Source: Macrostomum lignano | Taxonomy: Eukaryota | DNA length: 64,000 nt | Direction of reading: 5' to 3' | NCBI GenBank assembly: GCA_002269645.1 | Contig: NIVC01000926.1 | Location: 186,001 to 250,000 of the forward strand | In this document: positions 2,664 to 55,932 of the stretch, one piece after another | Layout of the letters: the number at the start of each line of letters is the position of its first letter | Numbering within the stretch: position 1 is the first letter of the stretch | The notes under the pieces: generated by a model | The model's input: only the letters and a program-made list of their open reading frames with translations | Database searches by the model: none | What the model was told of the DNA's origin: nothing | Program-made: the position numbers and the translations under genes

Positions 2664-3697
2664 TGAGGTGGGGGTGGAGAAGAACTTTCTTAGAACGGTT
2701 GTTTTTGAATTTGCTGACACCAGTGAGGTGGGGCGGATTCCTCGTTTGAATTGCCGCCGGCGTTGAGTTCGCACGAATAAAACCGGAAAAACGCGCAGAC
2801 GAATCACAACGAAATTTCTTCTCCTGTTTTACTCCGACAGCCGGGTTCTCAAGTCCGGGGGGAGGGTAGTTGTAATCGTAGCGGAGCGGTCGTATAGCGG
2901 CCCGGTCGTTCAGATCCGTAGACTCAATTGGTCTTGACACCGTAAATCTGCTTTTGAATTGTCGTACTGATTACTGTCAGTAGAGTAGCGCTGCCACCAC
3001 CGTAATTTGATCCGTATTACGGAACGTTGGGATCTCAGAGCTCGCTTAGAGTTGAGATCGATTCGGTTGTTTAACGCCCCACGGGCAAATGACTCACGAT
3101 AACTATTATGGGCTTCGTCAACGAGATAGACTTAATTATTAGTTAATTATTATTATTTATTGATGTTGTACTAGCAGGCGTAAATTGGCAAAATAAAGTT
3201 AAATTCAGACGATTGATCCTCGGCCGGTGCCGGGTGGGACGACTAACTGAACAAACTAGTAGATCGAGACTAAATAAGTACTAATTTAACTTCGTGCACA
3301 ACAGGAAATTAAACACTAAACAGACGAGTACACGAGGGTTCACGAAGCGGAATGGAACAGAAAACGAACAAGTAGGAGGCAAGGGAAAGGAAAGAGGGGA
3401 GGAGGGAGGAATGAAAACTTGCGGCCCGAAATGGCCTTAATAAATAATGGGGCGATGTCATCCGGACGGGGATAGAGCAGCAGATGGGGCAGGAAGGCGA
3501 AGGATGGGGCAGGAGATGGGGCGAAGGATGGGGCAACGGACGACAACAAAGCCGGGAATGAGAATACAAAAAATTACGCGCGACGGCAAAAGATGGGGCG
3601 AGTGATGGGACATGGGACGGCGCAACGGGTGACACAGAACGCGAGAGTCATTGCGGTGAGGTCACCTGTTCCAAACGTGGTAGTGCGCCCTACCACA
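2664..3697 (-). repeat. 5' LTR of family A (copy A1, 1034 bp)
   Basis: Termini TGTGGTAGG...CCCCACCTCA, followed by C + TGGTGGTCAGCTAAGTGGGAT (PBS-like); the ~450-bp U5-side core is shared with 4 other copies. Confidence 0.88.
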
Positions 3698-3819: not shown

Positions 3820-6800
3820 GTGCCGTAACCATAGCCGTAATGTATAACAAAAATTTATATTTTTGCATGAAAAGTGGGGCAGACAGAAAAGGATTGATAA
3901 AAAGGATAAAAGGATAGCAATAAAACCTACTTGTTGTTCGTTCATGTATTAATATTCATTTATTTTTTTCGTAAAGTATAATATCTTTATCGAAGTATTC
4001 TATAGCATTGTTGTATGCAATTGTGTGCTTGGTGCCTTTTTCAGTTTTCTGTGTCGTGATTCTGTTTTGTTTCGCTACAATATGAATATATGACTGACAT
4101 GCTAAGGTCAATATGTATGTTTAATATCATTAAATAAATATATGAATTTGTTCAAATAAAACTGCTTCAAAATTTCTGATGACTAAGAAATTGCATGTTA
4201 CATTTTTTCTTTTTCATTTTATTGCATTGTCTATTGTATTGTCTTCTTTGGTTTCAATCAATTTTCATTCATAATCAATCATACAGCAAAAAGATGGTAA
4301 AAATAAAAAGTAAAAAACTTGCTTTCAACAAAATTGTGGCAGCAGAACAAGATACATGTAGTGGCAAAAAGTGGGCTATATGGCAAAACTATGAACCAAG
4401 AACAATGAGATAGTAAAAATAAAAAAAATTAAAAACATTACTAAAGGTAAAGATAGCACCAGGCTATAGCTATAGGGTATTAGCACCTAATTATCACCTA
4501 CTGCAGCATGCTTATTGTGGAGAAGTACAGTCGAGTTAATCATAGTTATTTTAAATTTAAATTGTTCTCAATAAAAAGAAGCCTCTCGGCTCCCTCTGGA
4601 CTCAGTCGGTTACGCTTCTTTGTAACCGTACTGCCTGCTGCATTGAAAAGGCGTTCAGCGTCTGCACTGGTAGGTGGCACGGCCAATAGGCAGCGGGCAA
4701 GGATGGCCAAGACCGGAAATCGCACATGGTCAGAGCTGGATGTCGCCCAAAATCGGAGTGTTGCTGCTGCTTGTTGTTTGACACCTCCAGCTGGTATTGG
4801 AGACACTGTATTAAAAAATATATATAAGTATAAGAACTTAAGTAAAATATAAAATTGATTTCAGTTTCTCTATTACTTTCAATTTGAGTTCTTTAGATTC
4901 CGTTGTACAGAAAGGATTTGCAACAGGGTTTAACTTAAGTGTATTGGAGGCCCTATGTACATAAAATTAAAAAAAACTGGAATGCAAAAATAAGCAAGTA
5001 CAAGTGAAAGTAAAAACTTACCTGGCTCACCAAGGTAGCGCTTAAATTGTTCAGCAAACTCTACTTTTAACGATTGCTGCTCCTTGCTGTTCTCCAGGCT
5101 GCTCAGAGGACCATTTTATTGGGTTGAAATCTTCCAGCGTCAATGGTCGGAGCCTTGGTTGGTTGGACAGCTGAAATAGCTCATCGTCTTGAGTAGCAAC
5201 TGTTGTACCACAGCTGGATCTAGATCAATTGTCATCAATAATGACGGTGTCAGAGGCAGAGGCATGGTCACCCTGGAAGCTCATGTGGTTGCGGAGAAAA
5301 ATCTGCTGGAGCTTAGCATTCACTGCGGCAGTAGCTTTAGCTGCAGAGACAGGATCGCGAATGCCTGATATTTTGTAGTGTGGGTCCAGCACTGTTGCTG
5401 GACATCCCGAAATCGACTCTCAACTTCCTTCTTAAGTCCCTTAGCCAGTGTTTGCACACCAGTTGCTTGCGGTTCATCCTCACTTGCACAGTCCAAAAAT
5501 GCTACGAGTGCACAAATCTGAGAAAAAAATTAAGAAAGGTTGATTAGAATTATTTAGTTAGCTTTTTATTTTAGTAATATTGTACCTATATTGTACCTAG
5601 AAATAAAAATATAAACCTATAATTATTTCCTATAAGTATAAATTACTTTTATAAAGTTACAAAAAGTTTAAAGTTACCTTTGGGTAGACCATGCTTATCA
5701 GTGCATTGCATGAGAAAAAATCGGTTAGGTCGTGAATTGGATGCAGCAGAAATACTAAGCTCGGAAGAACTGCCCATTCTGAGTCCTTAAGATCAGCAAT
5801 TTTTTGTAGCCGACAGAAAACGTGAACAACAGCTTTCTAGTCTAGAAAAGACTCCAGCATAGAGAAATCGGAGTCCTATCTAGTAGGACAGGACTGCTTG
5901 AGTCATTTCGTTGAAGCAGCACCACTCTCAAGACAGGACTCGTTCCAAGAATCATTAGCAGCCTTGCTAATCCTGTTAAGATGGCCAGCAATTTGCTTGC
6001 AACAGGCTACCACATCATTGACAATTCGTTGCACTGGCTCTCCGTCGGAAGGAGTTGATGGAATGTTCTTGCGCACAGCATTCTGTAGGCGATGAACTAC
6101 ACACCCATGACGTGGGTACTCAAGCAGCCTAACTGCCTTCTGCATCACTGGGGCATTGTCTGTGACGAAGGCAACTACCCAGTCAGTAAGTTGCCAGTCT
6201 TCCAGAGCCTATCAGAATTAAAAGGTAAGAAAGAAAAGAAAAGAAAGTAACGTAAATTGTAAATAAAGTCAATAAAATGTTATTACTTATTAAGTATTAA
6301 AACAAGAAAATCAATACTGTATACTGTAAACTGTAAAAAATAAAAAATTATTGCAAATTTTTTTTTATTTTACCTGCTTAATCACAATCTTCATGTTCTC
6401 AGCATTTGCAGAGCCACGGATCTCTGGGCAGCAGAGTACAACACGGTTAAGCTTGCCATCGTCTTGGATAGTGAAAACAATAAGGCCCAGAATTTCAAAG
6501 GCAGCGTTTTCAGCAGTCCAACCATCCGTTGCAATTGCTACAGTTTTACTGGCAGATAAAATCTGACGCACTGGTTCAGCCACAGATTGGTACAGTTGTG
6601 GAATCGCAACACGGGCCATGTGGTCAGCAGTTGGGATTTGGTACCATGGGAAGCGTTTCTCTAAAAAGCCACCAAAGCCATAGTGTTCAACCATTGCATA
6701 GGGCTCCTGGTCAAGAGCAATGACAATTGCCAGGTCATTAGTCATCTCAATTGCCTTTGGATCAGAATGCGCCCATTTACTATTGACAGTTACAAAAGGC

Positions 6801-8170
6801 TGGCACAGTGTTTGCACTCTTTCAATATTTGCTTTGGGCTTTGTAGAACTTAGACTTGAAGTCAAAGTTAAAGTTGACTGAACCAAACTTTTTGGCTCAG
6901 ATGATGTAGACTGCAAACGAGCTTTTTTAGTAGCAGGAAACATAGCATCAGCTGCAAGCTCATTTTCTTTGAATTCATCTTTTCTTTTCTTCTCATCTTC
7001 CTTGGCTCCTAACACCTTCTCATGTTCCTCTTTGTGTCTTGTCTTCAAATAGGACCACATGCCTCCATTGGATGCATTTGCTTTCTTTGTTCCACGACGA
7101 ACAGTTGCATGACACAATGTGCACTCAGCAACCAAATTGTCATCTGCATTTGGTAGCATAAAAAAAGCTCCACAAAATACTGGTAGCACGATGAGGCCTA
7201 ACAATTTTGGCCTTGCAACTATGCTCAAGTTGCTCATGGCCACCCTCATGCTCACCATCCTTATCATCTGGCTTACTCATGGCACCACACTGTCACTGCA
7301 GCTTGAACTTAAACTCAAGTCAAGTCAATACTCAATAGGATAGACCAAATCCAAAAGTTAAGAGCTGCTACAGCTGGAATTAAAGAAATAAATAAGGAGT
7401 TTAATTTATATTGGTTACAAATTAATTTACATCAAACATCAAAGTAAAAATAAATTTTTTTTGTGCAGTTAGTTATATTACAATAAAAGACATAAAATTA
7501 ATAATAATAATAATAGGCATAATAAATATGATAAACTTAAACTTAAACTTAAACTTAAACTACAACAAAGCAAACAAGTAAACTACAATCAATCATAATT
7601 CATATTCATATCCTATTAGTATTTATTTAGTATTTCCTTATTAATATTCTTTCATCCTTATCCTCATAATCTAAATCTAATATCTAAATATCCTATTTTT
7701 ATGCTAAGGAGCTAAATGCTACATATGGCTAAGAAATAAGAATGCCAGATTCTTAGTCTCTTGCAGGCTTTGACTGGCTCTCTTTGTCTTGCTGCTATCA
7801 TGCTATCGCTATGCTATGCCGTATGCCTAATGAGAAAATTCGTGAAAAAAATTGTTTTTCGCTTTTCAAAAAGGTTCGTAGATATTTAGAAACTTAACAA
7901 ATGTAAAAAATAATAATAACTAGTAAAACAAAATGAAAACTGGTTGAAGTTGATATAAAAAATTTTCTTTTATAACACTAAACAGTTAAAAATAAATAAT
8001 TTTTGTTACGGCTACCAATTATGGCAAGTCTAGAAAAATCTCCGTAATCCGTAACTGTAACCGTAAGCTCAAAATATGTCCGTAACCGTAATCCGTAATA
8101 AAAATACAGCTTCAAAAGTGTCGTAGCCGTAATTTGCCGTAGCCGTAGCCGTAATTACAGTGGAACACTA
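3820..8170 (-). mobile_element. hAT DNA transposon, decayed; one terminus (TAGTGTTCCA at 8170) visible
   Basis: CCGTAA subterminal repeats at 8040-8155 and 3820-3845; transposase exons inside; left end approximate. Confidence 0.8.
4546..7280 (-). pseudogene. Multi-exon hAT transposase pseudogene (BED finger, DDE, dimerisation domain)
   Basis: SILWSFF..AECTLC..WSYLKTRH (BED), IATDGWT, CPTR*DS, RFPVLAILARCLLAVPPTSADAERLFNAAG; frameshift in A-run near 7160 and internal stops. Confidence 0.9.
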
Positions 8171-8345: not shown

Positions 8346-9408
8346 TGAGGTGGGGCGGAGGAAGGGTTGTGGTTCTTAGAATTGTTTTTGAAAATTAGCT
8401 GACACTAGTAAGGTAGGGTGGTCTCCATGTTTGAATTACCGCCGACGTTTGCACGAATAAGCTGGAAAATTGTACAGACAAAATCACAATAAAATCTTCC
8501 TCCTTTACTCCGACTGCTGGGTTCTCAGGTCCAGGGGGAGGGTAGTCGTAATTGTAGCGGAGCAGTTGTGTAGTGGCGCAGTTGTTCAAAGCGATGAAAC
8601 ACTGTAAATTCAGACACCGTAAATTAATGTGTCAATTTGCTGAGCTTGTTACTTTCAGTAGGGTAGAGCTGCCACCACCGTAATTTATGTATTACGGAAC
8701 GAATAAGTCTCTGAGCTTTCTTTGAGCTGAGAAAACTTCGGTAATTTTACGCCCCACGGGCAAAAGACTTAAGATGGGCTATGGCTTAATGTCAACAAAT
8801 AAATGTATTTATAAATATGGTTTAATTATTATTAATATTTATTAAATTCAAGTTGAGCAGGATAAACAGTAGGTAAATTATTATATTTTGACAATGGCAA
8901 GAATATTTTGGCAGGCCGCGGTGCTATGGCTAATTTAATTAAGCAAAATAAACCAAACTAAACACAACTAAACTAAGTAAAGGATGAGTGTTAAAAGTAA
9001 CCAAGAGCAGGAAGGTTGGCAGGAAGGAAAGATAAATTTACACAAGTTTAGGCATCAATTTATAGGCAAAATATGCAATGACTGTGCCTGAACCAGAAAA
9101 AAAGAAAATTTAATACGCGTCGGGTCCAGCAGCGGTAGAACAGAAGAAAAAGCATAGAATTAAATGAGGCACGCATTCAAGCAAGCAAAAGGGGAGCAAT
9201 TGTATAAGGAATGAGACTAAAAATCCCATAACGGGATGGGGAGCGTGATACAATTTTGAAACTTTTGTCCCGGCGCGGGAAAGCATAATTTCAGGGTTGG
9301 GAAAGCATGCATGCACGTAAAAGTAGTAATTTTTAAATATTGATATAAGTAACTAATAATGAAATTTATTAAGCAGAATTTATACCGACGGGGCAGCCAC
9401 CTGCCACA
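8346..9408 (-). mobile_element. Solo LTR, family A (copy A2, 1063 bp), TSD ATAG
   Basis: TGAGGTGGGG...CCTGCCACA flanked by ATAG at 8342-8345 and 9409-9412. Confidence 0.92.
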
Positions 9409-11211
9409 ATAGCATTTAGTGCCCAAATGGTAAAACACTATCTAATCCCTAATTAAGTAAAAAAATCTTGCATTTTCCGATAATCAAGGGTGTCCCATAG
9501 TTAGGAAGATAGCGTTTTACTCAGAAAAACTGTTGTACATAGGGACATTTTTGGCCAATTTTGGCATACACAGCGTACACAGTTTAGAGAAAGTACCCCA
9601 TGGCGTGCAATGGCGTGCCACGATACACCCACAATGGGCCCTGCCCACCAACAATATCCTGAATCCTGATGCATAAAATATATTTTTAAAAAACTGTTTT
9701 TTAAAACTGAAAAAGAAAGAAAAATGTTATTTTCTGGTGCTAATTTTCTTTTGTTAAAGTCATTAAAATTTCAACACAAATGAAAACTTTGTTAAAGTTT
9801 GACTTTTATAGAGATGTTCCGAAATGTCAATTTCGATTTTGATTTTCTGAAGTTAGGATTTTTTTAGAGCAAATTTTGATTTTGAAAAATGAGCAGTAAA
9901 TTGAAAGTAGAAAAGTGAGTGTTCTTTGTACTAAACTTTGTTTTTCTGAATTTCAATGTCAGAAAATTTCAATTTCAATTTTGGAAAGTAGCAAATTTCA
10001 ATTTCAATTTTGATTTCTAATTCTTCACATGCACTGCTACCCCTACCCCTACCGGGTACTACTGGGTTCCGATGTTGGTGTACATGGCACACCATTTTTT
10101 TACTGACTTTTTATTTTGGCGTACTCGTGCGATGATCCTGACTATAGAGGGTGTCTAAGCGGTAGCTAAATTATCCCCCTAATGCCTAACTCCCTAGTGC
10201 CTAATGTGTTTTATTGGCCTGCATGGCTTCCCTGGGATCTACACACCTCAAGTCTCTCCTTTTGTCTTCTCTTATTTTAGGTCTCCACAACCCTTTTTCC
10301 CCTAGTCTCAGATCCCTTTTTGGGTCTTCACTTCAATCTGGGTCATTCCATATAATGACGGTCATAACATTCTTACATACAAGCTCATTAATTAGTGCCT
10401 GTAATAAGCTAAAATCGTTTATATTTGAGTCATTCTAAAAGCAAAATATGTCTGTTACACTAAAAAAATTGTTTTACTCATTTGACTAATGATAACGAAA
10501 TAAATTGAAGGCTAAGTTACATGATGGTTGTAACAAGAGAAATCGAAACAGTTGAATGATGTATTTTGTATTTGTGAATTTACTCAATCTACAAAGCTTA
10601 GAGGCACTGTAATGAATAATAAGTGTATAAATGTTATTACAACAAGAAAAAATAGTGTACATAATAATTGCATAACAAGTCTTTGAACTATTAAACTTGT
10701 TTTAAACCTTGTGGTCGTAACATTGCAGTCGTAACAAATTTCAAACTACCGACTTCTAATTTTTTTTTCATTTCAGATCAACAAAGTACTATCCTTTGGC
10801 AAATTTCTACCTTTTAATAATAAATGAATAATAGAATAGCTATTTTTTGTGTTATTGAACACTTCAGACCAATATTTTTATCACTGAATAGTCAGAAGTT
10901 GTGGCAGTCATTGGAAGCATAAGTTCATGGAAGACCATCAAAACGGAAGTGGCCCCGCCTGTCAACAGGAGTTGGTGGGCTAATTTAATTTCCTGAATTA
11001 TATCTGTTTCATAATAATAAATTTCATCCTTCTTCTTAGGCCACATGAAATGGCGGTCACCAGATTCTTTTCAGAGTTAGGAAAGCATGCATGCACGTAA
11101 AAGTAGTAATTTTTAAATATTGATAAGTAACTATTAATGAAATTTATTAAGCACATGCACGGGCGGGCCGGGATAATGAAAAAAAAGTTTACAGCAAGCC
11201 TGCTGTTCAGT

Positions 11212-11941
11212 TCAGTGGCGGCCGCCTCGGCCGATGGGCATTCTGCCGCCGCAAGTCGCAGGCCGGGAGCTGCGGGCCGTCTCGCTCGGCGTCTTGTCCG
11301 GCGTCTCGCTCCTGGTCACTCTCGCGGACGAGCTCGCAACTCGGACAGCCTTACACAACTGTTCAATTACCGGCGGGATGCCGCGTTGCCGAACGTGCTC
11401 CACATAGCGCGCAACCAGGGTGCAGCACGGTCCCAGTTGTGGACCGGTGGTCTCGGCTTGTAGCCGTAGACCAGTCAGGGCAGCCGCGGTCTCGAGTGCC
11501 AGGGTGGTGTCGGCAGACGAGTGATGGCGGGCCACCGTGTCCCATGTTCGACAGTTGTTCATGTGCCTCGGCCCTGGGGGACGCAGCACCTCTAGATATA
11601 ACAACTCTTGAAGCATCTGGGCCGGCTCCAGACCGGCCGGCGGGGCTGTCTCCAGAGCTGGGGCGCCCGACGCCTCCGGAGTGGCCTGGCTGGAGTTGCT
11701 TGACCATGTAGAAGGCGGCAGTGGCGGCGTAATCTGCAGGCCGTATTCTAGTAGCCGCAGAAAGTCGGCGTCCTCGGCCTCCAGCGCGGGCCGGCGTGCA
11801 CCTGATCTAGAAATTGATCTACTCCGATGTCCGGGCTTGGGGCGGGCGCCAGTGGCGTGTGGAGCCCGGGTTGCGCCATCGGATCGTCAAAAATCTGCCA
11901 TTCAGGGGTGTCAATGTTCCACATTTGGTCGGCCATTCTGA
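11212..11941 (-). pseudogene. GC/CpG-rich ORF of unknown function (~240 aa, one frameshift near 11800)
   Basis: MADQMWNIDTPEW..FLDQVHA, then the 11212..11616 frame is open upstream (ALEAEDADFLRLLEYGLQ..). No domain recognised. Confidence 0.35.
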
Positions 11942-13404
11942 CGAGACAAAATGGAGTCAAATAGCAGTCGAAGGCTGGTCGCCGGATTGAATAATTGTCA
12001 GTCAATCAAGAGCAAAATTTGTTGCCGGATAAAATCAAGTGGCGAGCCAGACAATTAACAATTAATAAAAATCAGAGCCAGAGCGCGGCTTTTAATACTT
12101 GGGCTGCCATCACGCAGATGGAAAAAAGGGCTCCCAAACCAGGAACAGGCCTCCACCCCGCATGCACTCTATGGCGGGCAAGCATGGAGATGGGGTGGGT
12201 GGTTAAAAAATGAATTACAACCTCCGAGTTTTCTGACAAATTGTCCCTTTGTTGCCGGTGGAAATCGGCCTGTTGGCGGTTGGTGAGATGATGCACCAAA
12301 AATTTCGGCACGTTGATCAACAGCTTCTGCATGCCCTCTTGCAGCGTACTGCTGTTTTTGTTGGGCTGCATGCGTCCAGTGTCACGGTCGTCTTCCCACG
12401 ACAGGTAGTTGATCTGCACTGCAGCTTGCTCACGAGTTGGCGCCGGAATGCAATGAGCGAGACCTGACGAGCAGTTCTCGCACTGTGCCAGTTTGCAGGC
12501 CTCGCTGATGGGGCTGCACAGCACCAACTTGTCGACCCAGGAGCGAGAATATTCGTCAATGCCTGGCATCTGCTTAGCGATGGTGTTGCATAAACTGGAA
12601 TAAGAACGTGGTTTATAAAAAAGCATTTTGTGGGTTAAGAAAAATTCTTAAATTTTGGTCATATAATTAATTACAAAAAAGTGAATCCTACTTCTGAAAG
12701 TTGCTGTGATAAGTGCAGCAGCAAGCCTCCATCGGAGTCTTCTCCAATGTGATGACGTTAGGTGGCCGCAAATGACAGAACTTAGAGAGGGAAATTTTAC
12801 GTTCTGGTGCTTCGTCCAGAAAGAGGCGATGGCACTCTTTCAAATTCATAGCAAAAATCGCTTTTGCAGCTGCTGCCCGTTGACCTTAATGAATTCCTTG
12901 ACACCCGGTGACCAGCGGGAGATGTCCTCCCGATTATAAAATTGGAGGATGGCGTCCTGGGTTCCAGGGTCCAGCTTCTGCCGTGTAGCTGGAGCTGAAT
13001 CCGCAATAACCAGACCGCAGTCGGCAGCTAGCTGGCGCACAACGGCTAGGCGCCTATCGGGAGTGTTCGGCAGAGCGGCATTGCACCTGCAATGAATTTA
13101 AAATATGATTTTCTAATGATTTTCACTATTCTTTAAACAACTTTGAACCATAATAATTGCCATTAACGACTTACTTATTCACTGCCCGAGTGTGCGTGCG
13201 TTTGCTGCTATACGGTTCGCCTTCAGCAGCCTGTACATCAGGTATAGCAGGAGCCTGTTCAGCAGCAGCGGCCGCTGCTGTCTTCAGAGGCTGGCGCATC
13301 TTTTTCATCCGCTCCCTTGCTTGTGCACGCCATGTAGAAAAATAACTGAAGAAATAACACTGGCCAGTGAATTCGTAGACAATAACAACTTGAAAAAAAC
13401 CAAA

Positions 13405-15119
13405 AAAACTTAAGATGAAAAGGCTCCTCCAGCAGTATAACGTACTTGCGGCAGCGAAACGAGTAGTCATAGCTCTCAGCCAACTCAGATTCCATCTTAT
13501 CTTCAGAGAGATCTTCCTGAATCACCTCATCTGCACCTTTTAACGCAAATGGAAACTGCCTCTGCCACTTCTGTCTGAGCCATCATGAACTCAGTCCTGA
13601 TGTGTCGGCTCATTGAAGAGCGTGACTCCAACTCATAGTGCAGTTTCTGCTGTGAAGTTATGATCTCCCACCTATAGTCCGAAGAATCCTGTCTGTGGCT
13701 GAGTGTGGCACTAACTTTGTTGATGTGTTCAGAGAGAGTGGACAGTTTTCCTCTAATGTCTCTCTCGGATAGATCAGCCTGCTCAACTATTTTTTTCAAA
13801 CTGGTATTCGGTTGGTTTGAAACCACCCGCATCAGTTTCCCTGTTTTGGCTCTCAGATCAGCAATTCATGTCTCAACTCTCATGAAAGCATCATCCACAT
13901 CAACAGCATTTGCTTCATATTTTGAATGGAAGTTTTTGAAAGACTGTGACCTTGTGGTCGACCTTCTGCTTCTATGGACTTTGGCACCGTTGCCCAGAAC
14001 CATACAATTCCTGACTTCACACTCGTGGATTTGCTCAACGCCCTGGAAAAGTGGGCTGTCCACTAAATCAGCTAACATGTCACTGTCTGTGGGAGAAACC
14101 ATCCTTGGGCCGCAATCGGTGAAATGTCCCACCACCCAAAAACCGGGACAGTTGGGCTCCACTGCCATCTGTGAATCAAGCAGGTCCCACCATGTCCCCT
14201 TCAGCCGGGAAGGTGTGATACAAATGAGGCCTGGGTTATCTTCAGTCACTACAGAATCAGATTTTTCGGACACAACATCCATGTGGGTTCTGCTCAGCTT
14301 GAATCTGTCAACCAGAGAGATATTAAGGCAGCATTGAGCATGTGTCTCACCATCCACTGATGTTATAAGGCCCTGGCAAAGGTAGGTCCGATTGGACAAA
14401 ACCCAAGCGCCTGACTTCATTATCATAATTTGAGATTCAACAGGTCTTACCATATTAATGCCCAAATTGCCAACTGACTTACAGGAGTGGTCACTTTTGA
14501 GAGAAACGGAAGCCAGCTGTTGGCATCCATCCGCATGGAAACTATTGTTCACACGATAAGCAATAGGAGCGCTAGGAGGGATCATCTGCAAGACAACTCC
14601 GTACTCTCGACCTCCTGGAAGCACTACATCTTCTTTGACGGGCACAACAAGCTGAGTATCAGTAGAAGTGATTCCTGTCGAGGCCATAAGGCAAACAACT
14701 GTCACTTAAGACAAACCACAAAGATGAGTTCTCATTCCGTGTTGATAATGAGGCACATCCTTCCCTGGGCTGAGGATCAGGTGGCCGGCACAGGCAGAAT
14801 GATCAGTCCCACACTCACAATGAGTTGCAGACCCGGCAGATGCTATTCCTCTAAAAACAATCAGTTTTCTCAGGGCTTTGGACTTCCGTATCTGGTTCTT
14901 TTTCTTTTTGTCCTTGCAGTTGACACAGGGAATGATGGTTGCAGCAAGAGTGCCAAGGAAGGTGACAGCCCCAATAGCATAATCTTTGAATGTGCTAGAA
15001 AACATAGCAACTTTAGCCACATTCCTAACCTCTTTGGCACCAGTAGGGAAAGAACAAGCCTCAAAGATGCCGACAAGCAGTATCATTGCTGTAAGCCACC
15101 AAGTTGAGTAGCGGAACAT
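13405..15119 (-). pseudogene. Intronless Cys-rich membrane/glycoprotein-like ORF, possibly virus-derived (~570 codons, 2 stops, probable late frameshift)
   Basis: ORFs 14706..15119, 13866..14705 and 13527..13832 are one frame. Signal-peptide-like N-term, hydrophobic segment + KDKKKK, N-X-S/T sites (NNS, NRT, NIS, NTS), RSRR, coiled-coil-like C-term. Confidence 0.55.
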
Positions 15120-15194
15120 GATAGTTGTGTCCTGATTTGTTGGGATTTAAAGCTTGGAAGCACCCGATGAATACAGAACTCGGAAGTTTGTTAA

Positions 15195-17064
15195 TGTAGA
15201 TCGCGACTTTCCTAGTCATTTCTTAGTTCACCTTCACTTGTCTCTGTTTACTCTGTTTTCTCTCTCTCTGTCTAGCTCAATCTTGTTATTCTTATCTCTC
15301 TCTCTCCCTTGCTGCCTTCTGATTGGTTCTCCATTCTCGCCTCTCTCTTCAGTCGCGCACTTCACCCCTCTCCTTATTATCTGGAGTCAACCCCCCTCTA
15401 AATTAGTCATATAAATATACTTGTTTGGGCCCTGCGCCCACTTACTGGCTTATCTTAGTATTCAATTTAACATCTAATTTAGTTCTAGTGTTTTTAGTCT
15501 TATTTTCTCTACATGGCGCCCAATGAAAAATAATTCAGTCAATACAGTAAGGCTGGCAAAGGCCATGCCATCGTCGTAGTCGTAGCCCTACACCAGTCAT
15601 CTCGTCATCCCGTCATCGACTCCTAATCGTCTCGTCTCTGCTTGCCGGCCTCTCAATCGTCTCGTTGCCGGCCTCTCAATCGTCTCGTCTCTGCTTGCCG
15701 GCTTCTCAATCGTCTCGTCTACCGGCCTCTCAATCGTCTCCTCTCTGGTTGCCGGCCTCAATCGTCTCGTCTCTGCTTGCCGGCTTCTCAATCGTCTCGT
15801 CTACCGGCCTCTCAATCGTCTCCTCTCTGGTTGCCGGCCTCTCAATCATCTCATCTCTGGTTGCCGGCCTCAATCGTCTCGTCTCTGGTTGCCGGCCTCT
15901 CAATCATCTCGTCTCTGCTTGTCGGCCTCTCAATCGTCTCGTCTCTGGTTGCCGGCCTCTCAATCGTCTCGTTTCTGCTTGCCGGCCTCTCAATCGTCTC
16001 GTTGCCGGCCTCTCAATCGTCTCGTTGCCGGCCTCTCAATCGTCTCGTTGCCGGCCTCTCAATCGTCTCGTCTCTGGTTGCCGGCCTCAATCGTCTCGTC
16101 TCTGGTTGCCGGCCTCTCAATCGTCTCGTCTCTGGTTGCCGGCCTCTCAATCGTCTCGTCTGCCGGCCTCTCAATCGTCTCATCTCTGGTTGCCGGTCTC
16201 GTCTTCGGAGTCGGTGCCGGCAGCATATTCACATTTCAACTCGGGCTGTCGGTCTCGTCTTCGGAGTCGGTGCCGGCAGCATATTCGCATTTCAACTCGG
16301 GCTGTCGGTCTCGTCTTCGGAGTCGGTGCCGGCGGCATATTCACAATTCAACTCGGGCCGTCGTCACGTCTTCGGAGTCGGTGTCGGCAGTCAATCTCAC
16401 CGGTCTTTGTCAAACTTTCTTCACTCGGTCCCCCCCTCTCTTGTCAGTGTCTCCAGTTGTCTCTAGTCGTCTCCAGTTGTTCTTTTCATCAACTTGATTC
16501 TCATCTCATCTCATCTCTCTCATCTCAGCTCTCTTACTCAACTGACAATGTTAATGTTTTCTCTAAACTGTACTAGCCATTTACAATTAAAAATTGCTAA
16601 TTTTTAAGGGGGAGGGTGGATATATTTAGTCTTTTCAGTCTTCTCATTGGTTCAAAAACTACTCATTAAAAATCTAAAGTTTAAAATTCGCTCTTAATAT
16701 TTTGCATTCACTCTACTGTTTTTGTATTCAAATTCTTAGTCATATTATGTATTTTTCAAATCGTTTTATACACCATTTATTGTGAATGTGTTTTTCAATT
16801 TAATTCGACCTAATTCTAACCTAGCTCAATCTTGTTATTCTTATCTCTCTCTCTCTCCCTTGCTGCCTTCTGATTGGTTCTCCATTCTCGCCTCTCTCTT
16901 CAGTCGCGCACTTCACCCCTCTCCTTATTATCTGGAGTCAACCCCCCTCTAAATTAGTCATATAAATATACTTGTTTGGGCCCTGCGCCCACTTACTGGC
17001 TTATCTTAGTATTCAATTTAACATCTAATTTAGTTATAGTGTTTTTAGTCTTATTTTCTCTACA
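15195..17064 (+). mobile_element. Non-coding (non-autonomous) LTR element with Lys-type PBS
   Basis: LTR1 TGTAGA(15195)...TCTACA(15513), TGGCGCCCAA at 15514, PPT AAGGGGGAGGG near 16606-16616, LTR2 ends TCTACA at 17064; 15271-15513 and 16821-17064 are near-identical. Confidence 0.8.
15600..16400. repeat. Variable-length minisatellite (CTCAATCGTCTCG..GCCGGCCT) followed by ~57-bp repeats
   Basis: Directly visible; unit length varies and there are no unique spacers. Confidence 0.9.
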
Positions 17065-17908
17065 CTGCTTGGCAATATCTGCGCTGTCTGCGAACTGACG
17101 CCGCACTCGACTGCGCTCTCGCTCGGAGGCTCGAAGGACGTCGCCAGCTCGACGACGACAATTCCGAGAATTTTCCGCGGCTGTTTTAACCATAATTGTT
17201 TAATTTAAGAGCTTGCAAGAGGTTTACTAGCTGAAGAATGTAACTTATATGACTATAGAAGGAATATTTTGCATCAAATGTTGAATCGAAAAGGGGATTG
17301 AGCTGTGAGAATAATTATATTGACATTATATCACAGAATAATAGCATACTAACGTCTATGTTACGACCAGAAGGAGGATGTTACGACCACAACATTCTGG
17401 TCGTAACAAGCAGTTTTTAGCCTCAATGGGAAAATGTGGCAGTCTAAAAATTTCTGACAATACTGACACCATAAGGAATGAGTTTTTAAGTGTACCCTGC
17501 ACCCTATAATAACTTCCACTTCAATGAGTAGATTTGAATGCATTCTAAACATTCTGGTCGTAACATTCATACAGCTGACTAACTTTTATACAAAATACAT
17601 GTTTCTATTCAAACTGAAAAAAGATTCTAATATTGTAATGGGTAAAAGAGCATATGACTACATGATCTGATTATTCCACTGATCACTCCACCAATAGTTA
17701 TTGTTCCATTAAATAGTAAAGATGTGGAACAGTTTCTAAATTACACGTGTAAGAATTTAATCATAGTTTGAAAGCAATACCTCTTAAAACTAATTATTAA
17801 AATCAAAACTTATTGGCTAAATATGTATAGTTTAAATAAAAGTCATTAAAAACACTAAAATAGGAAGAAAAAAATTCAATTCTTTGTCCAAGTTATATGG
17901 AATGACCT

Positions 17909-22743: not shown

Positions 22744-24342
22744 TCACCTACGCATGTCCCAGTACTGCAATAAAATCGCCAAAGTGGCGTCCGCCATGCC
22801 GAAAGCGCAGTCCGGTCGGCGGTGCAGGAGTGCAGCCATGGCGGTGAACAGTCGCCGCAGGCGTGTAGATCGACCACCGCGCGGCCTATCACGGTAAGCG
22901 CTCAGCGGCTCGGGCTCCGACAGGATGCCGGCGGTGTAGGCGGCCTTCCAAAAGCTGGCCTCCGCCCGCGACATTTCCCGATACCACGCCGCTTTGCCGT
23001 CACACACACTACGGCGACCGGCGGCCCGTTGGCGGACCGTTGCACCGCCTCGCCGGACTCCAGTAGAGTCCGACAATATCGGTCGCACATGTTGCGTTGG
23101 CATTGGATCATCGCCTTTTGCGCCTCAGCGGGCGTGTCGCCATGACTGACTCCTTTTGACCTCTCTTGTGCAACGTACGCTATCATTGTTGTGAAGACAA
23201 TGCGGCAGCTGTGTATCTTAGTGGGCTCCTCGGCCCGTGCCGGTAGTCCCTTGGACACTCTGCAGCATGTCAATCACCGACGCAGCTTTGTCTTCCGCAT
23301 TTTTGGACGCCATGGCGATCCAGTCTGCTGGCCAGTCATAGCCATTGACGCACAATGGTGCGCACGATGCGCAAACAGTGGCTGCCGTACTCACTGCTGC
23401 GCCGGCTGGCGGTTGCGCAGGTGCACAGCTAACGGCCGGTTGTTTACGCGCGGGCGGCTGGGCTGCCGCACTCGTTGCTGCGCCGGCTGGCGGTTGCACA
23501 GGTGCACAGCTAACGGCCGGTTGTTTACCCGCGGGCGGCTGGGCTGCCTCACTCGCTGCTGCGCCGGCTGGCGGTTGCACAGGTGCACAGCTAACGGCCG
23601 GTTGTTTACCCGCGGGCGGCTGGGCTGCCGCACTCGTTGCTGCGCCGGCTGGCGGTTGCACAGGTGCACAGCTAACGGCCGGTTGTTTACCCGCGGGCGG
23701 CTGGGCTGCCGCACTCGCTGCTGCGCCGGCTGGCGGTTGCACAGGTGCACAGCTAACGGCCGGTTGTTTACCCGCGGGCGGCTGGGCTGCCGCACTCGCT
23801 GCTGCGCCGGCTGGCGGTTGTACAGATGCACAGCTAACGGCCGGTTGTTTACCCGCGGGCGGCTGGGCTGCCGTACTCACTGCTGCGCCGGCTGGCAGTT
23901 GCGTAAGTGCACAGCTAATGGCCAGTTGTATATCCGCGGGTGACTGGGCTGCCGCTCTCGCTGCTGCGCCGGCTGGCGGTTGCGCTGAGCCAGCTACACC
24001 AACAGCTGGCGGCACGAGGTGGTCCCACTGGGACAAGTGCAGCAATCTGTCACTGACATCGCTAGCCTGCACAGCAACCAGTGCAATTTCACCATGCAGC
24101 TCATTGAATCGATCTTGGAGGTCGCAAAGAATCTCTCCACACTCAGAGAGTATTTGCGGCAGCAGCCACTGCAGCTTGTAGATAAGTGTACCGCTGATTG
24201 CGACATTATTTGACATATGTGCAATATTGCTTTGTAAAATGCTCGCAGACTTCGATATCTTTAGCAAAGAGTGATTCCGCCATAGAATTAGAATTACTCT
24301 GGAATGGTTGTAGGATAGCATAATTACTACAAGAATAGACAC
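22744..24342 (-). pseudogene. Unknown TE-accessory-like ORF: coiled coil + 27-aa Pro/Ala repeats + frameshifted C-terminus
   Basis: ORF 23218..24342; 81-bp tandem repeat x~6.5 at 23380-23990. Confidence 0.4.
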
Positions 24343-33039: not shown

Positions 33040-35159
33040 ACATCGAATATTATTCTCATATGCTCGTATTGACCATACTCTCAATTAGACTAGGTGCACA
33101 TAAGCTTGTATTTATAAACTCGTGAGCTGTAAAGGTCATAAAGTATTGAAATAAACGCATTCGTAATTTAGGTGCACCTAACCTAATGCGAAAAGTCATT
33201 TGTAATAATATTTATAAGTAATCATACTTCTAGTTATTTTCACGACCAATTCCATGCTATTCTACCTGGACTATTCTAACCTGGACTGCAAGCCTCAGAA
33301 TTTCCTCATGTGGGCCTCACTGGGGTTTCGGTGCACAAGATGCGGGGCAGAGACCAAGTTGGGGCAGGGAAGAGAGGGGAAGACAGGAAAGGCAGTGAAC
33401 AATGTGCAGTGAATTTAATTCCAAGTTATTTTATTCAAGGCGACCCATTTCATTCCTTGCTCTTTTCATACTTTAAAGTATGTTCTTTATTGCTCTAGAC
33501 AAGTGTACGGCTTATCAAAAAGCAAATTCTCCTGTTTGTTAGTTTAAATTTCTATTTTTCTTCTTGCAACAATGCAAATTGCAATCCAATGTTCCCGCCT
33601 CTCGTATCTGGCGCTCTCCGCGGCCAGCCGGTTCGCAATGGGCAGGTTGGGGGACCTCCCGCCTTCACTATCTCACTGATGGGCAGTTTTTTTAACTGAC
33701 GGGCAAACAATTACTCCAGGTTTCAATTTGCTGGGTTGTTTGCCCCAAGTTTCAATCTCTGACTCTGAATTTTGGTTGCAAGTCCAGATTGCAAAGTATA
33801 GAAGTTTGGTCTTAGAAAAGGATTCCAAAGCACCAGGTGGGGCCGTGGGGGCGGCAGAGGCAAAGACCTGGCCCTGCAATTCCCAGCGCTCTGCTTTTCG
33901 GTTCAACCTAGGAGCAACTGCACCCAGTGCCCAGTGGTGCAGTAAACCAAATAATTCTATATATCAATTCTAGATTAAGTTTGATATATAGAATTCTTTG
34001 AGTAAACCCAGCCCCAGTTCTGCGGCGCCTTTCGGCCTGGGCATATAATTCTAGATATAGTTTGAAACGAGTATCTAGAATGCTATGGCCTGGGTCACAG
34101 GGGCAATAAATCACTTGTACGAGCACTGGGTTTCCACACAAGGCCTTCACAGCGCAGCCCTTATCTGCTCGCAGGCAGATAAGGGCTCATGGGAGAGATA
34201 TTAAAGAGCGAGGAACAACGGAGCCCTGGCTTTATGTAACAATTCTGTAACAATTCTTACATGTAACAATGTAACAGTTATGTAACACTTTAGCTCGTAT
34301 AAACAGAAAATCTTTTGCTCGTTTTGATCTAAATATTGCAGATGGTGTGGTGTGTTGCTCCATATAGACTCATATAGTAGCATCTGGACTGTAAATTATT
34401 TTTTTCGTTTTTTATTACATGGGAGCAACTTCTCCCCATTATGAAGCTAGCTTAAATTTTCGGGCCTCAAGGAGTCTATTTTTGCTCGTTCAGTCAGTCA
34501 GTCACTCACTCACCCAAGTCACTCTCTAACTCGCTCATCCAATCAGTTACTCACTCACTCATTCTATATACGGTATTTACATGTAAGGCGACCTAGCGGG
34601 CTGGCCTAGCGGAACTCTTTGCCTCCATTTGGCTCCCCAATTTCCTCTTACCGGTAAAACCAAACTACGGGTTGATTGTCTAGGGGTTTTTGCATTGCAT
34701 AGGGGTTTTTGTCTTTGTCCATGGACTCCTAGATATACTAGGTATATCTAGGAGTCCATGCTTTGTCTCGTCTCGAAGTATTTCTTGGTTTATTGTGTCT
34801 TATTTTTCCGTGGGCAGTGGGACCATTTTTCCACCATTTGCAAAAAAGCAAGTCCAGGCAGGCAGTGCGGGATGCGCAGTCTAGTTATATTTCTTGGTCT
34901 GTGCCCCTTGGGCATGCCCCTCTAAAGTATTGTGAACAAAGAAGGATCTGTGCTTCAAATAAAGATCAAGGCCAGCCAGGCTGTAAATTAAAAATGGCCA
35001 TGTTTGAATTGTTCGAAGAACACCTGGATGAGGCAGGCGGAAGGGAAGCAGGATTGTTTATATCATTTTTATGCTTGTTTATTCAGTATTTATGACAGTA
35101 CATAACTTTATTGCCGGTGGTAAAGAACGAGAGTCGCAATTTAGTCGCAAGTTTGGGGA

Positions 35160-35605
35160 GAGATGAGGGTGAGACTGTGAGATAGATGAGGGTGAGACTG
35201 TGAGATAGATGAGGGTGAGACTGTGAGATAGATAAGGGTGAGACTGTGAGATAGATGAGGGTGAGACTGTGAGATAGATGAGGGTGAGGCTGTGAGATAG
35301 ATGAGGGTGAGACTGTGAGATAGATGAGGGTGAGACTGTGAGATAGATGAGGGTGAGACTGTGAGATAGATGATGGTGAGACTGTGAGATAGATGAGGGT
35401 GAGACTGTGAGATAGATGAGGGTGAGACTGTGAGATAGATGAGGGTGAGACTGTGAGATAGATGATGGTGAGACTGTGAGATAGATGAGGGTGAGACTGT
35501 GAGATAGATGAGGGTGAGACTGTGAGATAGATGATGGTGAGACTGTGAGATAGATGATGGTGAGACTGTGAAATAGATGGGGGTGAGACTGTGAGATAGA
35601 CATGA
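35160..35605. repeat. 23-bp minisatellite x~19 (GAGGGTGAGACTGTGAGATAGAT)
   Basis: Directly visible. Confidence 0.95.
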
Positions 35606-36497
35606 AGGTGAGACTGAGATATCGATGCTGCGTGAACTGTCTGGATAAGAGTAGTCTGGGCTGGTTAAAATAATTTTTCCTACTGGAACTGGTGTTACCT
35701 CAACGGTCTACTGACAGTAGCACATCAAGAATGCTTTAATTTTTATTCGCCGTTTTTAGTTTGAATTAAATCAGATGTCAAAGGACTTGTTACGGACTCA
35801 CAAAATGAGTCAGGACAGAAAGGACTGAAATCGGACCCCCCAAAATTACGCTGAAAATAGAACAAAATATCCTCGAAAAACACCGAAAAAGACATTAACA
35901 GTCGGTTTAAAGTCTTAATTGACAAAAAAATTTTTTTGGAAATCAGCTCATGGGGGACCAATCCGAGTCCGATCAGGGTCCGCCGGACTCAACCTTTTAC
36001 ACTGGGAAAGTGCCCGTGAAAATTATTTTCCTAGATGGAAGATTTCTAGCATTGTAGTTTATTTCTCCCAAATAATTTTTTTTAATGGGTAGAACTAATT
36101 TAGGAGTAGCTCTGGGTCTAGGTAATTGAGTTGGGTAGGGTAGGTAATAGGTGCAAAGTGACCTGTCTTACGCTATTTTGTGATTTGGAGATGTTTTTTA
36201 TACTTTTAAGTAAATAAGTAACTACTAACTGCATGGATTGACTGTATACCACTGATTTCTTCACCATGTGTAGTTACTTCTGCATATAAGACGTAAAATG
36301 CAACTGACTTTAAAATAATTCCGTTGCGGATTGTGGATCTCTATAACTACTAGCTTTCAAGTTTCAACAAACAAATAAGAACTAATGCAAGGGAGCCAGC
36401 TATGTCGCCTTAAGGCGGGCAGGCGCCTGACGGAGCCAGTCGGTAATGGCTGTTTTAACTATATTTGATTCGCACTTGCCCGACTTGCTACCCTGGA

Positions 36498-45090: not shown

Positions 45091-46156
45091 CAAGTGAAAT
45101 AGATTACAGCTTTTTTACAGTGATTTGTAAATAAATTTATTGTGTAATGATACACAGCTTTCTATAGTTAAGACATCAGATAAATAATATTTTTTCTCAA
45201 AATAATACATTGACTAAAATGAATCAAAGTAAGTAATTCAGTAACTTTTTACCATCAAGTTACTAAATAAAGGTTAAAACTAGCTATGGAACTATCTAAA
45301 AATTTGTTTGAAACTAGCAGTGGCTACAAATCTATGTTTAAAGCGAAAATATTTGCTTCGCTGTTGTACTTGGATGTACTTGCTCTGAAATTCGGCGCAA
45401 CTCAGACGACACCGAGGTTACGACTTTGACTGACTGGTACACGAATGCTAAGCAGAGCGATACCGAGTTTCAACCTCTGGGTGCTCCGTGTCCATCAGGT
45501 GCGGTTGGCGGCTCTTCTGACCAAAGGGGAAACAACAGGCGAGTTGTTATGCAACTACCGGTTTCGCACGAATCCTTCCCTGATGTAGACGAAATTGTCT
45601 TGGACTTTGGAGAAGGAATAAAGGTGCGCGTGTTCATTGTACATGTAACTTATTTAATGTTTAGTATCTTTCTGTAGGACAGATCTATGCACTCTAATTT
45701 ACTACAGTATTGTATATTACTCAGTCAAGAATGTATAAAATTTTGTTTTAAGCAAACTTGTAAATTTTTGTTCATTAATTATACCTTTCTACAGAAGCTA
45801 TACAGACTGGTGCCGTCTGGCGAGAGCCAACTCGAGTCAACACGAATCGACTGGAGTACGCAGGCGGATGAAAGAAGTAGAATGTCATGCGAAGATTTCT
45901 CTGGCAGTTCAAGAAATCAGTGAGTTATTGAAGCACATGTGTTGAAAAGCCATCACAAGTAAATTTTAGCATGGAAAAAGAATTGCTACATTGGCCCTAC
46001 ATGCTAAAATTCCTGCTGCATTGGCATTGGCATGAATATGAAGTACCTTTAGATTGGGTGCATAAGTCCAATTTGGATACTAAAATTTAGGATATGGGCT
46101 ATTTAAGATATGGGCTATTTAAAACTTAATTGTAGTTTTGGTACTCCAGTAAGATT

Positions 46157-46775
46157 TCTGAGAATTTCAGCTAAGTAGAGTTGTGAGAATTTCCGCTAAT
46201 ATGGTTTATGAAAATTTCAGCTAATGAGATTTCTGAGAATTTCAGCTATTGGGATGTGTGAGAATGTCAGCTAATGGGAGTTCTGAGACTTTCAGCTAAT
46301 GGGATTTCGGAGAATTTCAGCTAATGGGATTTCGGAGAATTTCAGCTAATGGGAGTTCTGAGAATTTCAGCTAATGGGAGTTCTGAGAATGTCAGCTAAT
46401 GGGGTTTCTGAGAATTTCAGCTAATGGGAGTTCTGAGAATTTCCGCTAATATGGTTTATGAAAATTTCAGCTAATGAGATTTCTGAGAATTTCAGCTATT
46501 GGGATGTGTGAGAATTTCAGCTAATGGGAGTTCTGAGAATGTCAGCTAATGGGAGTTCTGAGAATGTCAGCTAATGGGAGTTCTGAGAATGTCAGCTAAT
46601 GGGATTTCTGAGAATTTCAGCTAATGGGAGTTCTGAGAATTTCAGCTAATATGGTTTATGAAAATTTCAGCTAATGAGATTTCTGAGAATTTCAGCTATT
46701 GGGATGTCTGAGAATGTCAGCTAATGGGAGTTCTGAGAGTTTCAGCTAACGGGAGTTCTGAGAATTTTAGCTATT
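46157..46775. repeat. 25-bp satellite x~25 with higher-order structure
   Basis: GAGAATTTCAGCTAATGGGAGTTCT; variant block GCTAATATGGTTTATG recurs at 46195, 46445 and 46645. Confidence 0.95.
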
Positions 46776-55189: not shown

Positions 55190-55790
55190 AAATTGGAGGA
55201 AAAAGAAGAGAGATGAGATGAGGAGAGGAGAGAGTAGAAAGTAGAGATGAGAGAGATGAGATGAGACAGAGAGAGGAGAGAGGAGAAAGTAGAGAAGAGA
55301 TATATGAGATGAGAGAGAGAGAGGAAGGAGGAGAAAGTAGAGATGAGAGAGAAGAGATTAGAGATTAGAGAGTGGAGAGAGAGGAGAGAAGATATTGAAA
55401 GAGAGGGGGCATAAGAGGGGAAAGAAAATAGTACAGAGGGGAGAGTTGAGAACATATAAGAGAGTAAAGATGACAGAAGAGAGAGTGGAGATGATCGAGA
55501 GAGCAGGGACGAGAGTGAACAGACGACAGATGGTAGAATAGAGAGAACAGAGGAGAGAGAAGTGATAAGAGAGAAGCTATTACGGAGACGAGAGCAGAGA
55601 GGAGAGACAAAGGGAGAGAGAAGTGGAGTGAGGAAAGAGGAGAGAAGAGGGGGGAGAATCGAGAGCACAGTGGAGAGAGGGGAAGGGAGAGACGGGTGAG
55701 GAGAGGAAAGAAAATAATGGAGGGGGGAGAGAATAGAAAGGAGATGAGAGATGAGAGAGCAGAGAACAGAGAGATGAGTGGAGAGACAAG

Positions 55791-55864
<74 letters not shown>

Positions 55865-55877
55865 ATAGAGAGAGAGA

Positions 55878-55932
<55 letters not shown>

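What the first reader, a model, noticed from the sequence alone, without database searches (positions are those of the whole stretch)
13405..15119. Virus-like glycoprotein pseudogene 75 bp from an LTR
Seen: one intronless frame of ~530 codons with only two stops, probably continuing ~40 codons after a frameshift. It has a signal-like N-term, a hydrophobic segment followed by a basic cluster, a C-x-C-x3-H-x2-C-x2-H cluster, many Cys, four N-glycosylation sequons, RSRR and a coiled-coil-like tail. It is CpG-poor, unlike the neighbouring intron-containing TE gene. Established: non-retroviral endogenous viral elements often sit beside LTR elements, and some LTR elements captured viral envelopes. 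Inference: an endogenised RNA-virus glycoprotein precursor or an unknown env. I cannot name the family.
Basis: partly seen in the sequence, partly recalled or inferred. Interest (0 to 1): 0.7.

Follow-up and report, generated by a model that had tools for sequence, protein, structure and literature searches.

The report
Decayed orphan membrane-protein gene, flatworm
This is a real but broken intronless gene in the flatworm Macrostomum lignano that once encoded a membrane-anchored protein; nothing like it was found in any database searched, so a viral origin is neither supported nor excluded, and the LTR next to it is an unrelated recent insertion.

Summary
The minus-strand frame 15119 to 13530 runs 530 codons with two in-frame stops (about 29 expected by chance) and shows a normal coding signature. 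The N-terminal hydrophobic segments, polybasic stretch, Cys/His cluster, RSRR and CpG depletion (o/e 0.37-0.39 against 0.88 for the window) are all present.

Several clues are weak. Four sequons and one RSRR are what chance gives. A coiled coil is not shown; the tail is only helical and charged. The frameshifted extension cannot be verified. The LTR lies 152 bp away, not 75.

The window is Macrostomum lignano contig NIVC01000926.1, a TE-saturated genome. The ORF lies outside a young non-autonomous LTR element and points away from it.

No homologue was found in Pfam, PDB sequences, 5.8 billion clustered proteins, 1.84 billion HMMER-scanned representatives, IMG/VR, JGI metagenomes or GTDB genomes. 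The single hit is a repeat artefact. The AlphaFold model is poor (pLDDT 38) and Foldseek is uninformative.

There is no fusion peptide after RSRR, no C-terminal anchor, no poly(A) or target-site-duplication signature, and no other viral gene in the window.

Best reading: a dead, lineage-restricted membrane or secretory protein gene of undetermined origin. Viral glycoprotein origin has a probability of about 0.1.

The parts
13405..15119 (-). Broken intronless ORF, given as one part. The main frame runs 15119 to 13530 (530 codons) and has two in-frame stops. A possible further ~40 codons in another frame down to ~13405 would need one frameshift; this is unverified.
15048..15104 (-). Hydrophobic segment 1 (residues 6-24), signal-peptide-like or first membrane span.
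   Evidence: Kyte-Doolittle mean 1.59 over 19 residues; AF2 helix 2-21
14922..14978 (-). Hydrophobic segment 2 (residues 48-66), the strongest membrane-span candidate.
   Evidence: Kyte-Doolittle mean 1.97
14850..14915 (-). Polybasic stretch (residues 69-90). Net charge is +10 within residues 61-90, which implies a cytosolic face by the positive-inside rule (inference).
14781..14822 (-). Cys/His cluster H-C-x-C-x3-H-x2-C-x2-H (residues 100-113), a candidate metal-binding site.
   Evidence: no Pfam model matches it
14667..14723 (-). Hydrophobic segment 3 (residues 133-151), a candidate re-insertion or internal signal segment.
   Evidence: Kyte-Doolittle mean 1.72
13974..14666 (-). Middle region (residues 152-382) with 10 Cys and 3 sequons, putatively lumenal or extracellular. 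No fold could be assigned.
   Evidence: pLDDT 22-34
13962..13973 (-). RSRR, the single R-x-K/R-R motif. It is followed by polar sequence, not a fusion peptide.
13530..13961 (-). C-terminal tail (residues 387-530): Pro/Gly-poor (2.1%), 30% charged, predicted helical. A coiled coil is not demonstrated, and there is no membrane anchor.
15120..15271 (.). 152-bp spacer between the ATG and the truncated or short 5' LTR. It is unique in the window.
15272..17064 (+). Neighbour, not part of the gene: a young non-autonomous LTR element on the plus strand.
- LTR copies at 15272-15513 and 16821-17064 differ by 1 mismatch and one 2-bp microsatellite indel.
- A PBS-like TGGCGCCCAA sits at 15514-15523.
- The interior is CpG-rich tandem repeats (about 15600-16400).
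- A PPT-like purine tract lies near 16606-16616. This suggests that the 3' LTR really starts at about 16617 (TG...CA) and that the 5' copy is 5'-truncated.
11200..13345 (-). Neighbour, not shown to belong to the gene: a CpG-rich, intron-containing ORF of TE-like appearance on the same strand immediately downstream. It is itself broken by at least one frameshift, and its family is unresolved.

Best explanation
The stretch is an inactivated, intronless, low-copy gene that has resided for a long time in the Macrostomum lignano genome and has no detectable relatives.

While it was intact it encoded a protein of about 530-570 residues inserted in the secretory-pathway membrane. The inferred layout is:
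- an N-terminal signal-like or first membrane span;
- a second span followed by a strongly basic cytosolic loop that carries a Cys/His metal-binding-type cluster;
- a third hydrophobic segment that would take the chain back across the membrane;
- a ~230-residue Cys-containing lumenal or extracellular region;
- one dibasic motif;
- a charged helical tail.

It does nothing now: it has two in-frame stops and possibly one frameshift.

The LTR element upstream and the CpG-rich TE-like gene downstream are later, unrelated insertions into or beside it.

What is shown: the coding nature of the frame, the breaks, the sequence features, the absence of homologues, and the position relative to the LTRs. 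What is inferred: the membrane topology, the age order of the pieces, and the attribution to resident DNA rather than to a virus.
For: - Real coding frame: stop depletion P = 1.6e-10 and coding-type codon-position composition on the minus strand only.
- Membrane features: three hydrophobic segments, a +10 loop, and Cys and sequons concentrated after the third segment.
- CpG depletion came before inactivation (inference). CpG o/e is 0.37 with TpG 1.44 and CpA 1.40, yet the frame has only two stops in 530 codons. Such strong depletion is unlikely to have built up only after the frame broke.
- Depletion fits long residence in a methylating genome. M. lignano keeps DNMT1 and DNMT3 and has low 5mC (PMC11292947).
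- The flanking elements are CpG-rich (0.74-1.24). The LTR pair is about 99% identical, so they are younger arrivals.
- The ORF lies outside the LTR pair. No terminal inverted repeats bound it. There is only one copy in the 64 kb window plus 8 kb beyond it.
- No viral family was detected anywhere in the window.
- The host was identified through P0002 on GCA_002269645.1, contig NIVC01000926.1.
Against: - No parent gene or paralogue appeared among the searched proteins, although the sparse NCBI gene set of this assembly is in the collection. A host gene family with an expressed member should have been found.
- The rest of the genome could not be searched, so copy number is unknown.
- Its composition matches a hAT-like transposase gene in the window, so a CpG-poor profile is not exclusive to host genes.
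- The topology is predicted from hydropathy alone.
- The structure model is unusable (pLDDT 38).
Confidence: 0.45

Rival explanations
1. Accessory or env-like ORF of an unclassified transposable element. It might form one unit with the intron-containing TE-like gene immediately downstream on the same strand.
For: - The window is TE-saturated: gypsy, hAT, non-LTR RT and gag families.
- The ORF is unannotated, intronless, decayed and without homologues, as many fast-evolving TE accessory ORFs are.
- The downstream gene starts within about 200 bp of the ORF's end on the same strand.
Against: - There is a sharp compositional break between the two genes: CpG o/e 0.37 against 0.74-0.94, and GC3 0.47 against 0.60-0.62.
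- No terminal repeats bound the unit.
- No second copy lies in 72 kb.
- It is not between pol and a 3' LTR. It lies outside the only adjacent LTR pair and points away from it.
Confidence: 0.2
2. Endogenous viral element: a relic of a glycoprotein precursor gene from an unknown virus that infected macrostomid flatworms.
For: - It is an intronless decayed ORF with a signal-like start.
- It has a membrane span followed by a basic stretch, a Cys/His cluster, another hydrophobic segment and a Cys-containing domain. From my own knowledge this order recalls polyprotein junctions of some enveloped RNA viruses; that is a lead, not a test.
- It has one RSRR.
- Its composition differs from most TE ORFs here.
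- Viral glycoproteins are often sequence orphans.
Against: - No match to any viral protein by sequence and none by fold, although the model is poor.
- No hydrophobic fusion peptide after RSRR and no C-terminal anchor.
- Sequons and RSRR are at chance level.
- No poly(A) tract on the ORF's strand.
- No other viral gene family in the window.
- CpG depletion is explicable by host methylation.
Confidence: 0.12
3. A live gene whose apparent breaks are errors of the long-read assembly.
For: The break count is low: two stops and at most one frameshift in about 570 codons. By my own recollection, not checked here, Mlig_3_7 is a long-read assembly.
Against: - By my own knowledge of long-read data, their usual errors are indels, whereas the two certain breaks here are in-frame stop codons.
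- The ORF is absent from the transcript-based gene set held in the collection.
Confidence: 0.08
4. A chance open frame or an antisense artefact.
For: Two long antisense ORFs exist on the plus strand.
Against: P(<=2 stops) = 1.6e-10. The coding signature is on the minus frame only.
Confidence: 0.01

Closest known systems
Retroviral or errantiviral-type Env (class I fusion glycoprotein: SU, furin site, fusion peptide, heptad repeats, membrane anchor)
   Same: It has a signal-like N-terminus, a single R-x-K/R-R motif about 70% of the way along, a Cys-containing region before that motif and a helical region after it, and it lies near an LTR.
   Different: - The sequence after RSRR is polar, so there is no fusion peptide.
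- No hydrophobic anchor lies after residue 151.
- Heptad periodicity is at chance level.
- The ORF is outside the LTR pair and points away from it.
- No sequence or fold match.
Glycoprotein-precursor junctions of Bunyavirales (Gn membrane span, zinc-binding cytoplasmic tail, signal for Gc); comparison from my own knowledge
   Same: The order of elements is alike: a span, a basic stretch, a Cys/His cluster, a second hydrophobic segment, then a Cys-containing lumenal region.
   Different: The ORF is far shorter than such precursors as I recall them. No Pfam viral glycoprotein model matched at E <= 1. There is no terminal anchor. Whether the cluster fits their zinc-finger pattern was not tested.
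Non-retroviral endogenous viral elements of invertebrate genomes
   Same: An intronless, decayed ORF embedded among transposable elements.
   Different: Such elements are recognised by significant similarity to proteins of exogenous viruses, and none was found here. No retro-copy signature is present.
Lineage-restricted (orphan) genes and decaying duplicates in the neopolyploid M. lignano genome (PMC10733133)
   Same: No homologues outside the lineage, CpG depletion as methylated resident DNA would show, and a low number of breaks.
   Different: No intact parent or paralogue was found among the proteins held for this assembly.

Membership tests
Class I viral fusion glycoprotein / retroelement Env | N-terminal signal peptide | tested here: met
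   Residues 6-24 are hydrophobic, Kyte-Doolittle mean 1.59. This is by hydropathy only.
Class I viral fusion glycoprotein / retroelement Env | Furin-type site immediately followed by a hydrophobic fusion peptide | tested here: not met
   RSRR is present, but the following ~30 residues are polar or charged, and no hydrophobic window lies after residue 151.
Class I viral fusion glycoprotein / retroelement Env | Heptad-repeat coiled coil in the C-terminal subunit | tested here: inconclusive
   A crude heptad score gives 0.75 against a shuffled maximum of 0.76 +/- 0.08. The helices are predicted at pLDDT 60-76.
Class I viral fusion glycoprotein / retroelement Env | C-terminal membrane anchor | tested here: not met
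   None lies in the preserved frame. A 3' truncation by the neighbouring insertion cannot be excluded.
Env of an LTR retroelement | Lies inside the element, downstream of pol, on the LTR's strand, ending near the 3' LTR | tested here: not met
   The ORF is outside the LTR pair 15272-17064. Its start, not its end, faces the LTR. The element's interior is tandem repeats with no pol.
Non-retroviral endogenous viral element | Significant similarity to a protein of an exogenous virus | tested here: not met
   Pfam, PDB, 5.8 billion clusters, 1.84 billion representatives, IMG/VR and BFVD gave nothing.
Non-retroviral endogenous viral element | Retro-copy signature (poly(A) tract at the 3' end, target-site duplication) or adjoining viral genes | tested here: not met
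   No A-tract follows the ORF on its strand. Only retroelement and hAT families occur in the window.
Processed pseudogene of a host gene | Identifiable parent gene | tested here: not met
   No M. lignano or other protein matched. The unannotated genome could not be searched.
Processed pseudogene of a host gene | Intronless copy with a 3' poly(A) tract | tested here: inconclusive
   It is intronless, but no poly(A) tract is present. The 3' end abuts another element.
Transposable-element ORF | Multiple dispersed copies with defined termini | not testable with these tools
   There is one copy in 72 kb and no terminal repeats.

The most novel reading that the evidence does not exclude
The ORF is the relic of an envelope or glycoprotein gene of a so far unknown virus lineage that once infected free-living macrostomid flatworms. 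In that case its membrane-span, metal-cluster and re-insertion layout would be the only trace of that lineage.
Probability: 0.1. Interest if true: 0.6.

Novelty: new member of a known kind. Interest (0 to 1): 0.25.

Why it matters
As it stands this matters little. It is one more decayed, unclassifiable ORF in a flatworm genome dominated by repeats.

It would matter if natural relatives turned up. A match to an exogenous virus would give the first endogenous glycoprotein relic from a free-living flatworm virus. A family of intact copies in Macrostomum would define a new lineage-specific membrane-protein family.

The case also shows that sequons, a single dibasic site, CpG depletion and closeness to an LTR are not by themselves evidence of viral origin in a TE-saturated, weakly methylating genome.

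Tried and rejected
**Searches that found nothing**
- Pfam on the three uninterrupted pieces at E <= 1.
- PDB sequence search on each piece.
- Word-indexed search of 5.8 billion protein clusters with the longest piece.
- Pattern scans of IMG/VR with two pieces, of JGI metagenomes and of GTDB genomes.
- Exact-sequence look-ups of the ORF pieces and of neighbouring ORFs; none is on record.
- A search with one exon of the neighbouring gene. Pfam and PDB also did not classify that gene.
- Rfam and tRNA scans of the window.

**The single database hit**
- The full HMMER scan of 1.84 billion representatives used the whole frame, with X marking the stops. It returned one hit, P0001.
- I rejected it. 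P0001 is a bacterial secreted repeat protein with a Por_Secre_tail domain, and eight near-identical repeats each align weakly (about 28%) to the same ~60 residues.

**Structure**
- AlphaFold2 without an alignment gave pLDDT 38.
- Foldseek against BFVD and PDB gave TM-scores of at most 0.19 relative to the query and only generic helical bundles.

**Ideas considered and rejected**
- The plus-strand ORFs as the real gene: they lack the coding signature.
- Terminal inverted repeats around the unit: none.
- The missing 5' part of the LTR lying elsewhere in the window: not found.
- A DHHC-type cysteine-rich domain between the spans: no Pfam match.
- Baculovirus or nudivirus PIF-type proteins: no Pfam match.

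Full report
**What is there**

- Read on the minus strand from the ATG at 15119, one frame runs 530 codons to 13530 with two in-frame stops. An in-frame stop lies nine codons upstream of that ATG, so the ATG is the likely start.
- From the base composition 28.7 stops are expected, so P(<=2) = 1.6e-10. The other two minus-strand frames carry 37-45 stops per 700 codons.
- Codon-position composition is that of a coding sequence: G at position 1 is 0.32, purines at position 1 are 0.62, and G at position 2 is 0.19. This resembles control ORFs of the window. The two long antisense ORFs on the plus strand lack the signature.
- The stretch is therefore a real, lightly decayed coding sequence with two stops.
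An open run of that length is not unusual by chance, and no homologue exists to check it against. The frameshift count is therefore nought or one.

**The features claimed**

- Hydrophobic segments lie at residues 6-24, 48-66 and 133-151.
- Residues 61-90 carry a net charge of +10.
- The cluster H-C-x-C-x3-H-x2-C-x2-H sits at residues 100-113.
- There are 20 Cys, ten of them between residues 152 and 382. There are four sequons and one RSRR.
- Four sequons compare with 2.8 +/- 1.5 in shuffled sequence. From the Arg and Lys content I estimate about 0.2 dibasic sites by chance.
- The tail (residues 387-530) is Pro/Gly-poor (2.1%), 30% charged and predicted helical at pLDDT 60-76. Its heptad score equals that of shuffles, so 'coiled coil' is not shown.
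- By the positive-inside rule (inference) the basic loop and the Cys/His cluster would be cytosolic. The third hydrophobic segment would carry the rest of the chain into the lumen. This fits where the Cys residues and sequons lie.
- Nothing hydrophobic follows RSRR, and there is no C-terminal anchor.

**Composition**

- CpG o/e is 0.37-0.39 (window 0.88), with TpG 1.44, CpA 1.40, TpA 0.47 and GC3 0.47. This is the lowest 1.3% of equal-sized windows.
- Most TE ORFs in the window have CpG o/e 0.74-1.21 and GC3 0.50-0.75. One hAT-like gene has CpG 0.33 and GC3 0.39.
- The frame has only two stops, so the strong CpG depletion most likely came before inactivation (inference).

**Where the window comes from**

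- A gypsy pol ORF of the window is 100% identical to a gene on NCBI assembly GCA_002269645.1, contig NIVC01000926.1. Papers name this assembly as Macrostomum lignano Mlig_3_7 (PMC5730564, PMC10733133).
- The window is record positions 186001-250000 in the same orientation. The ORF is therefore at about 199405-201119.
- M. lignano is reported to keep DNMT1 and DNMT3 and to have low-level 5mC (PMC11292947). CpG depletion therefore needs no foreign source.

**Surroundings**

- The 'LTR' is a direct repeat at 15272-15513 and 16821-17064, with one mismatch and one 2-bp microsatellite indel.
- The left copy is followed by TGGCGCCCAA, a primer-binding-site-like sequence. The interior is CpG-rich tandem repeats without pol.
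- A purine tract near 16606-16616 followed by TG suggests a 3' LTR of about 448 bp. The left copy would then be 5'-truncated. The missing part is nowhere else in the window.
- This is therefore a young, non-autonomous plus-strand LTR element. The ORF lies 152 bp outside it and points away from it.
- Downstream on the ORF's strand, from about 13345, lies a CpG-rich gene with introns and at least one frameshift. I could not classify it.
- The compositional break between the ORF and this gene is sharp.
- No inverted repeats bound the ORF unit. No second copy exists in the window or in 8 kb beyond it.
- A Pfam scan of 83 stop-free stretches of at least 100 codons found only reverse transcriptase, RNase H, aspartic protease, gag/PNMA and hAT families. 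No viral polymerase, nucleoprotein or other viral family appeared.

**Homology**

- Nothing was found in Pfam, PDB sequences, 5.8 billion protein clusters, IMG/VR, JGI metagenomes or GTDB genomes.
- The exhaustive HMMER scan of 1.84 billion representatives returned one protein, P0001. It is a bacterial secreted repeat protein, and eight repeats each align at about 28% to the same 60 residues. That inflates the score, and I treat the hit as spurious.
- The collection holds only a sparse gene set for this assembly: one gene in 22 kb around the gypsy element. The ORF's pieces are not in it. Unannotated paralogues in the genome would therefore have been missed.
- AlphaFold2 without an alignment gave pLDDT 38. 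Foldseek returned nothing meaningful from BFVD or PDB.

**Interpretation**

- The best-supported statement is that this is a dead, lineage-restricted gene for a membrane-inserted secretory-pathway protein. It is older than the two CpG-rich elements that flank it, and its origin is undetermined.
- I put 0.45 on long-resident host-type DNA, 0.2 on an accessory ORF of an unclassified TE, 0.12 on a viral relic, 0.08 on a live gene with assembly errors, and about 0.01 on chance.
- The viral reading is not refuted. It rests only on a non-specific architecture. It also lacks a fusion peptide, an anchor, a retro-copy signature, neighbouring viral genes and any similarity to viruses.
- Closeness to an LTR carries no weight in a window this full of TEs, and here the LTR element is demonstrably a separate and recent arrival.

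**Limits**

- I could not search the rest of the M. lignano genome or other Macrostomum data, so copy number and natural intact relatives remain unknown.
- Searches used the uninterrupted pieces as they stand, or the frame with X marking the stops.

Noticed in passing
window 15272-17064: A young non-autonomous LTR element on the plus strand. The LTR copies are about 99% identical. It has a PBS-like TGGCGCCCAA, and its interior is made of CpG-rich 23-30 bp and 56 bp tandem repeats. A PPT-like tract ~200 bp upstream of the right repeat suggests that the left LTR is 5'-truncated.
   Followed up: partly
window 4549-7276, minus strand: A hAT-like transposase gene, with a BED-like Cys/His N-terminus at 6368-7276 and a hAT dimerisation domain at 4549-4860. 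It is as CpG-depleted (0.33) and as low in GC3 (0.39) as the target, unlike every other TE ORF in the window.
   Followed up: partly
window 9289-9375 and 11069-11153: An 87-bp direct repeat (96-97% identical) flanks 1.7 kb of AT-rich DNA. The right copy lies at the downstream end of the TE-like gene next to the target. Its meaning is unknown.
   Followed up: no
window 11200-13345, minus strand: A CpG-rich, intron-containing, TE-like gene with at least one frameshift. No Pfam, PDB or protein-cluster match was found with the pieces tried, so its family is unresolved.
   Followed up: partly
window 2708-3100, 8393-8786, 56984-57287, 58200-58593, 59283-59683: A family of LTR- or UTR-like repeats (60-92% identical) associated with gypsy-type gag sequences. 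The copies at 56.7-59.7 kb are clustered next to the gypsy element at 60475-62481.
   Followed up: no
window 60475-62469, minus strand: The gypsy gag-protease-RT ORF is annotated as a gene in the NCBI record (P0002, 644 aa). Its nearest relatives are only about 40% identical and come from echinoderms and fishes.
   Followed up: partly
window 23299-24064, 35043-35692, 46050-46899, 52065-52379, 55745-55988: Five tandem-repeat arrays, with units of 81, 23, 25 and 18 bp and a (GA)n-rich tract. The 81-bp array creates long spurious ORFs on both strands.
   Followed up: no
window 17101-17200: A 100-bp patch with 14 CpG immediately after the right LTR, in otherwise AT-rich, CpG-poor DNA.
   Followed up: no
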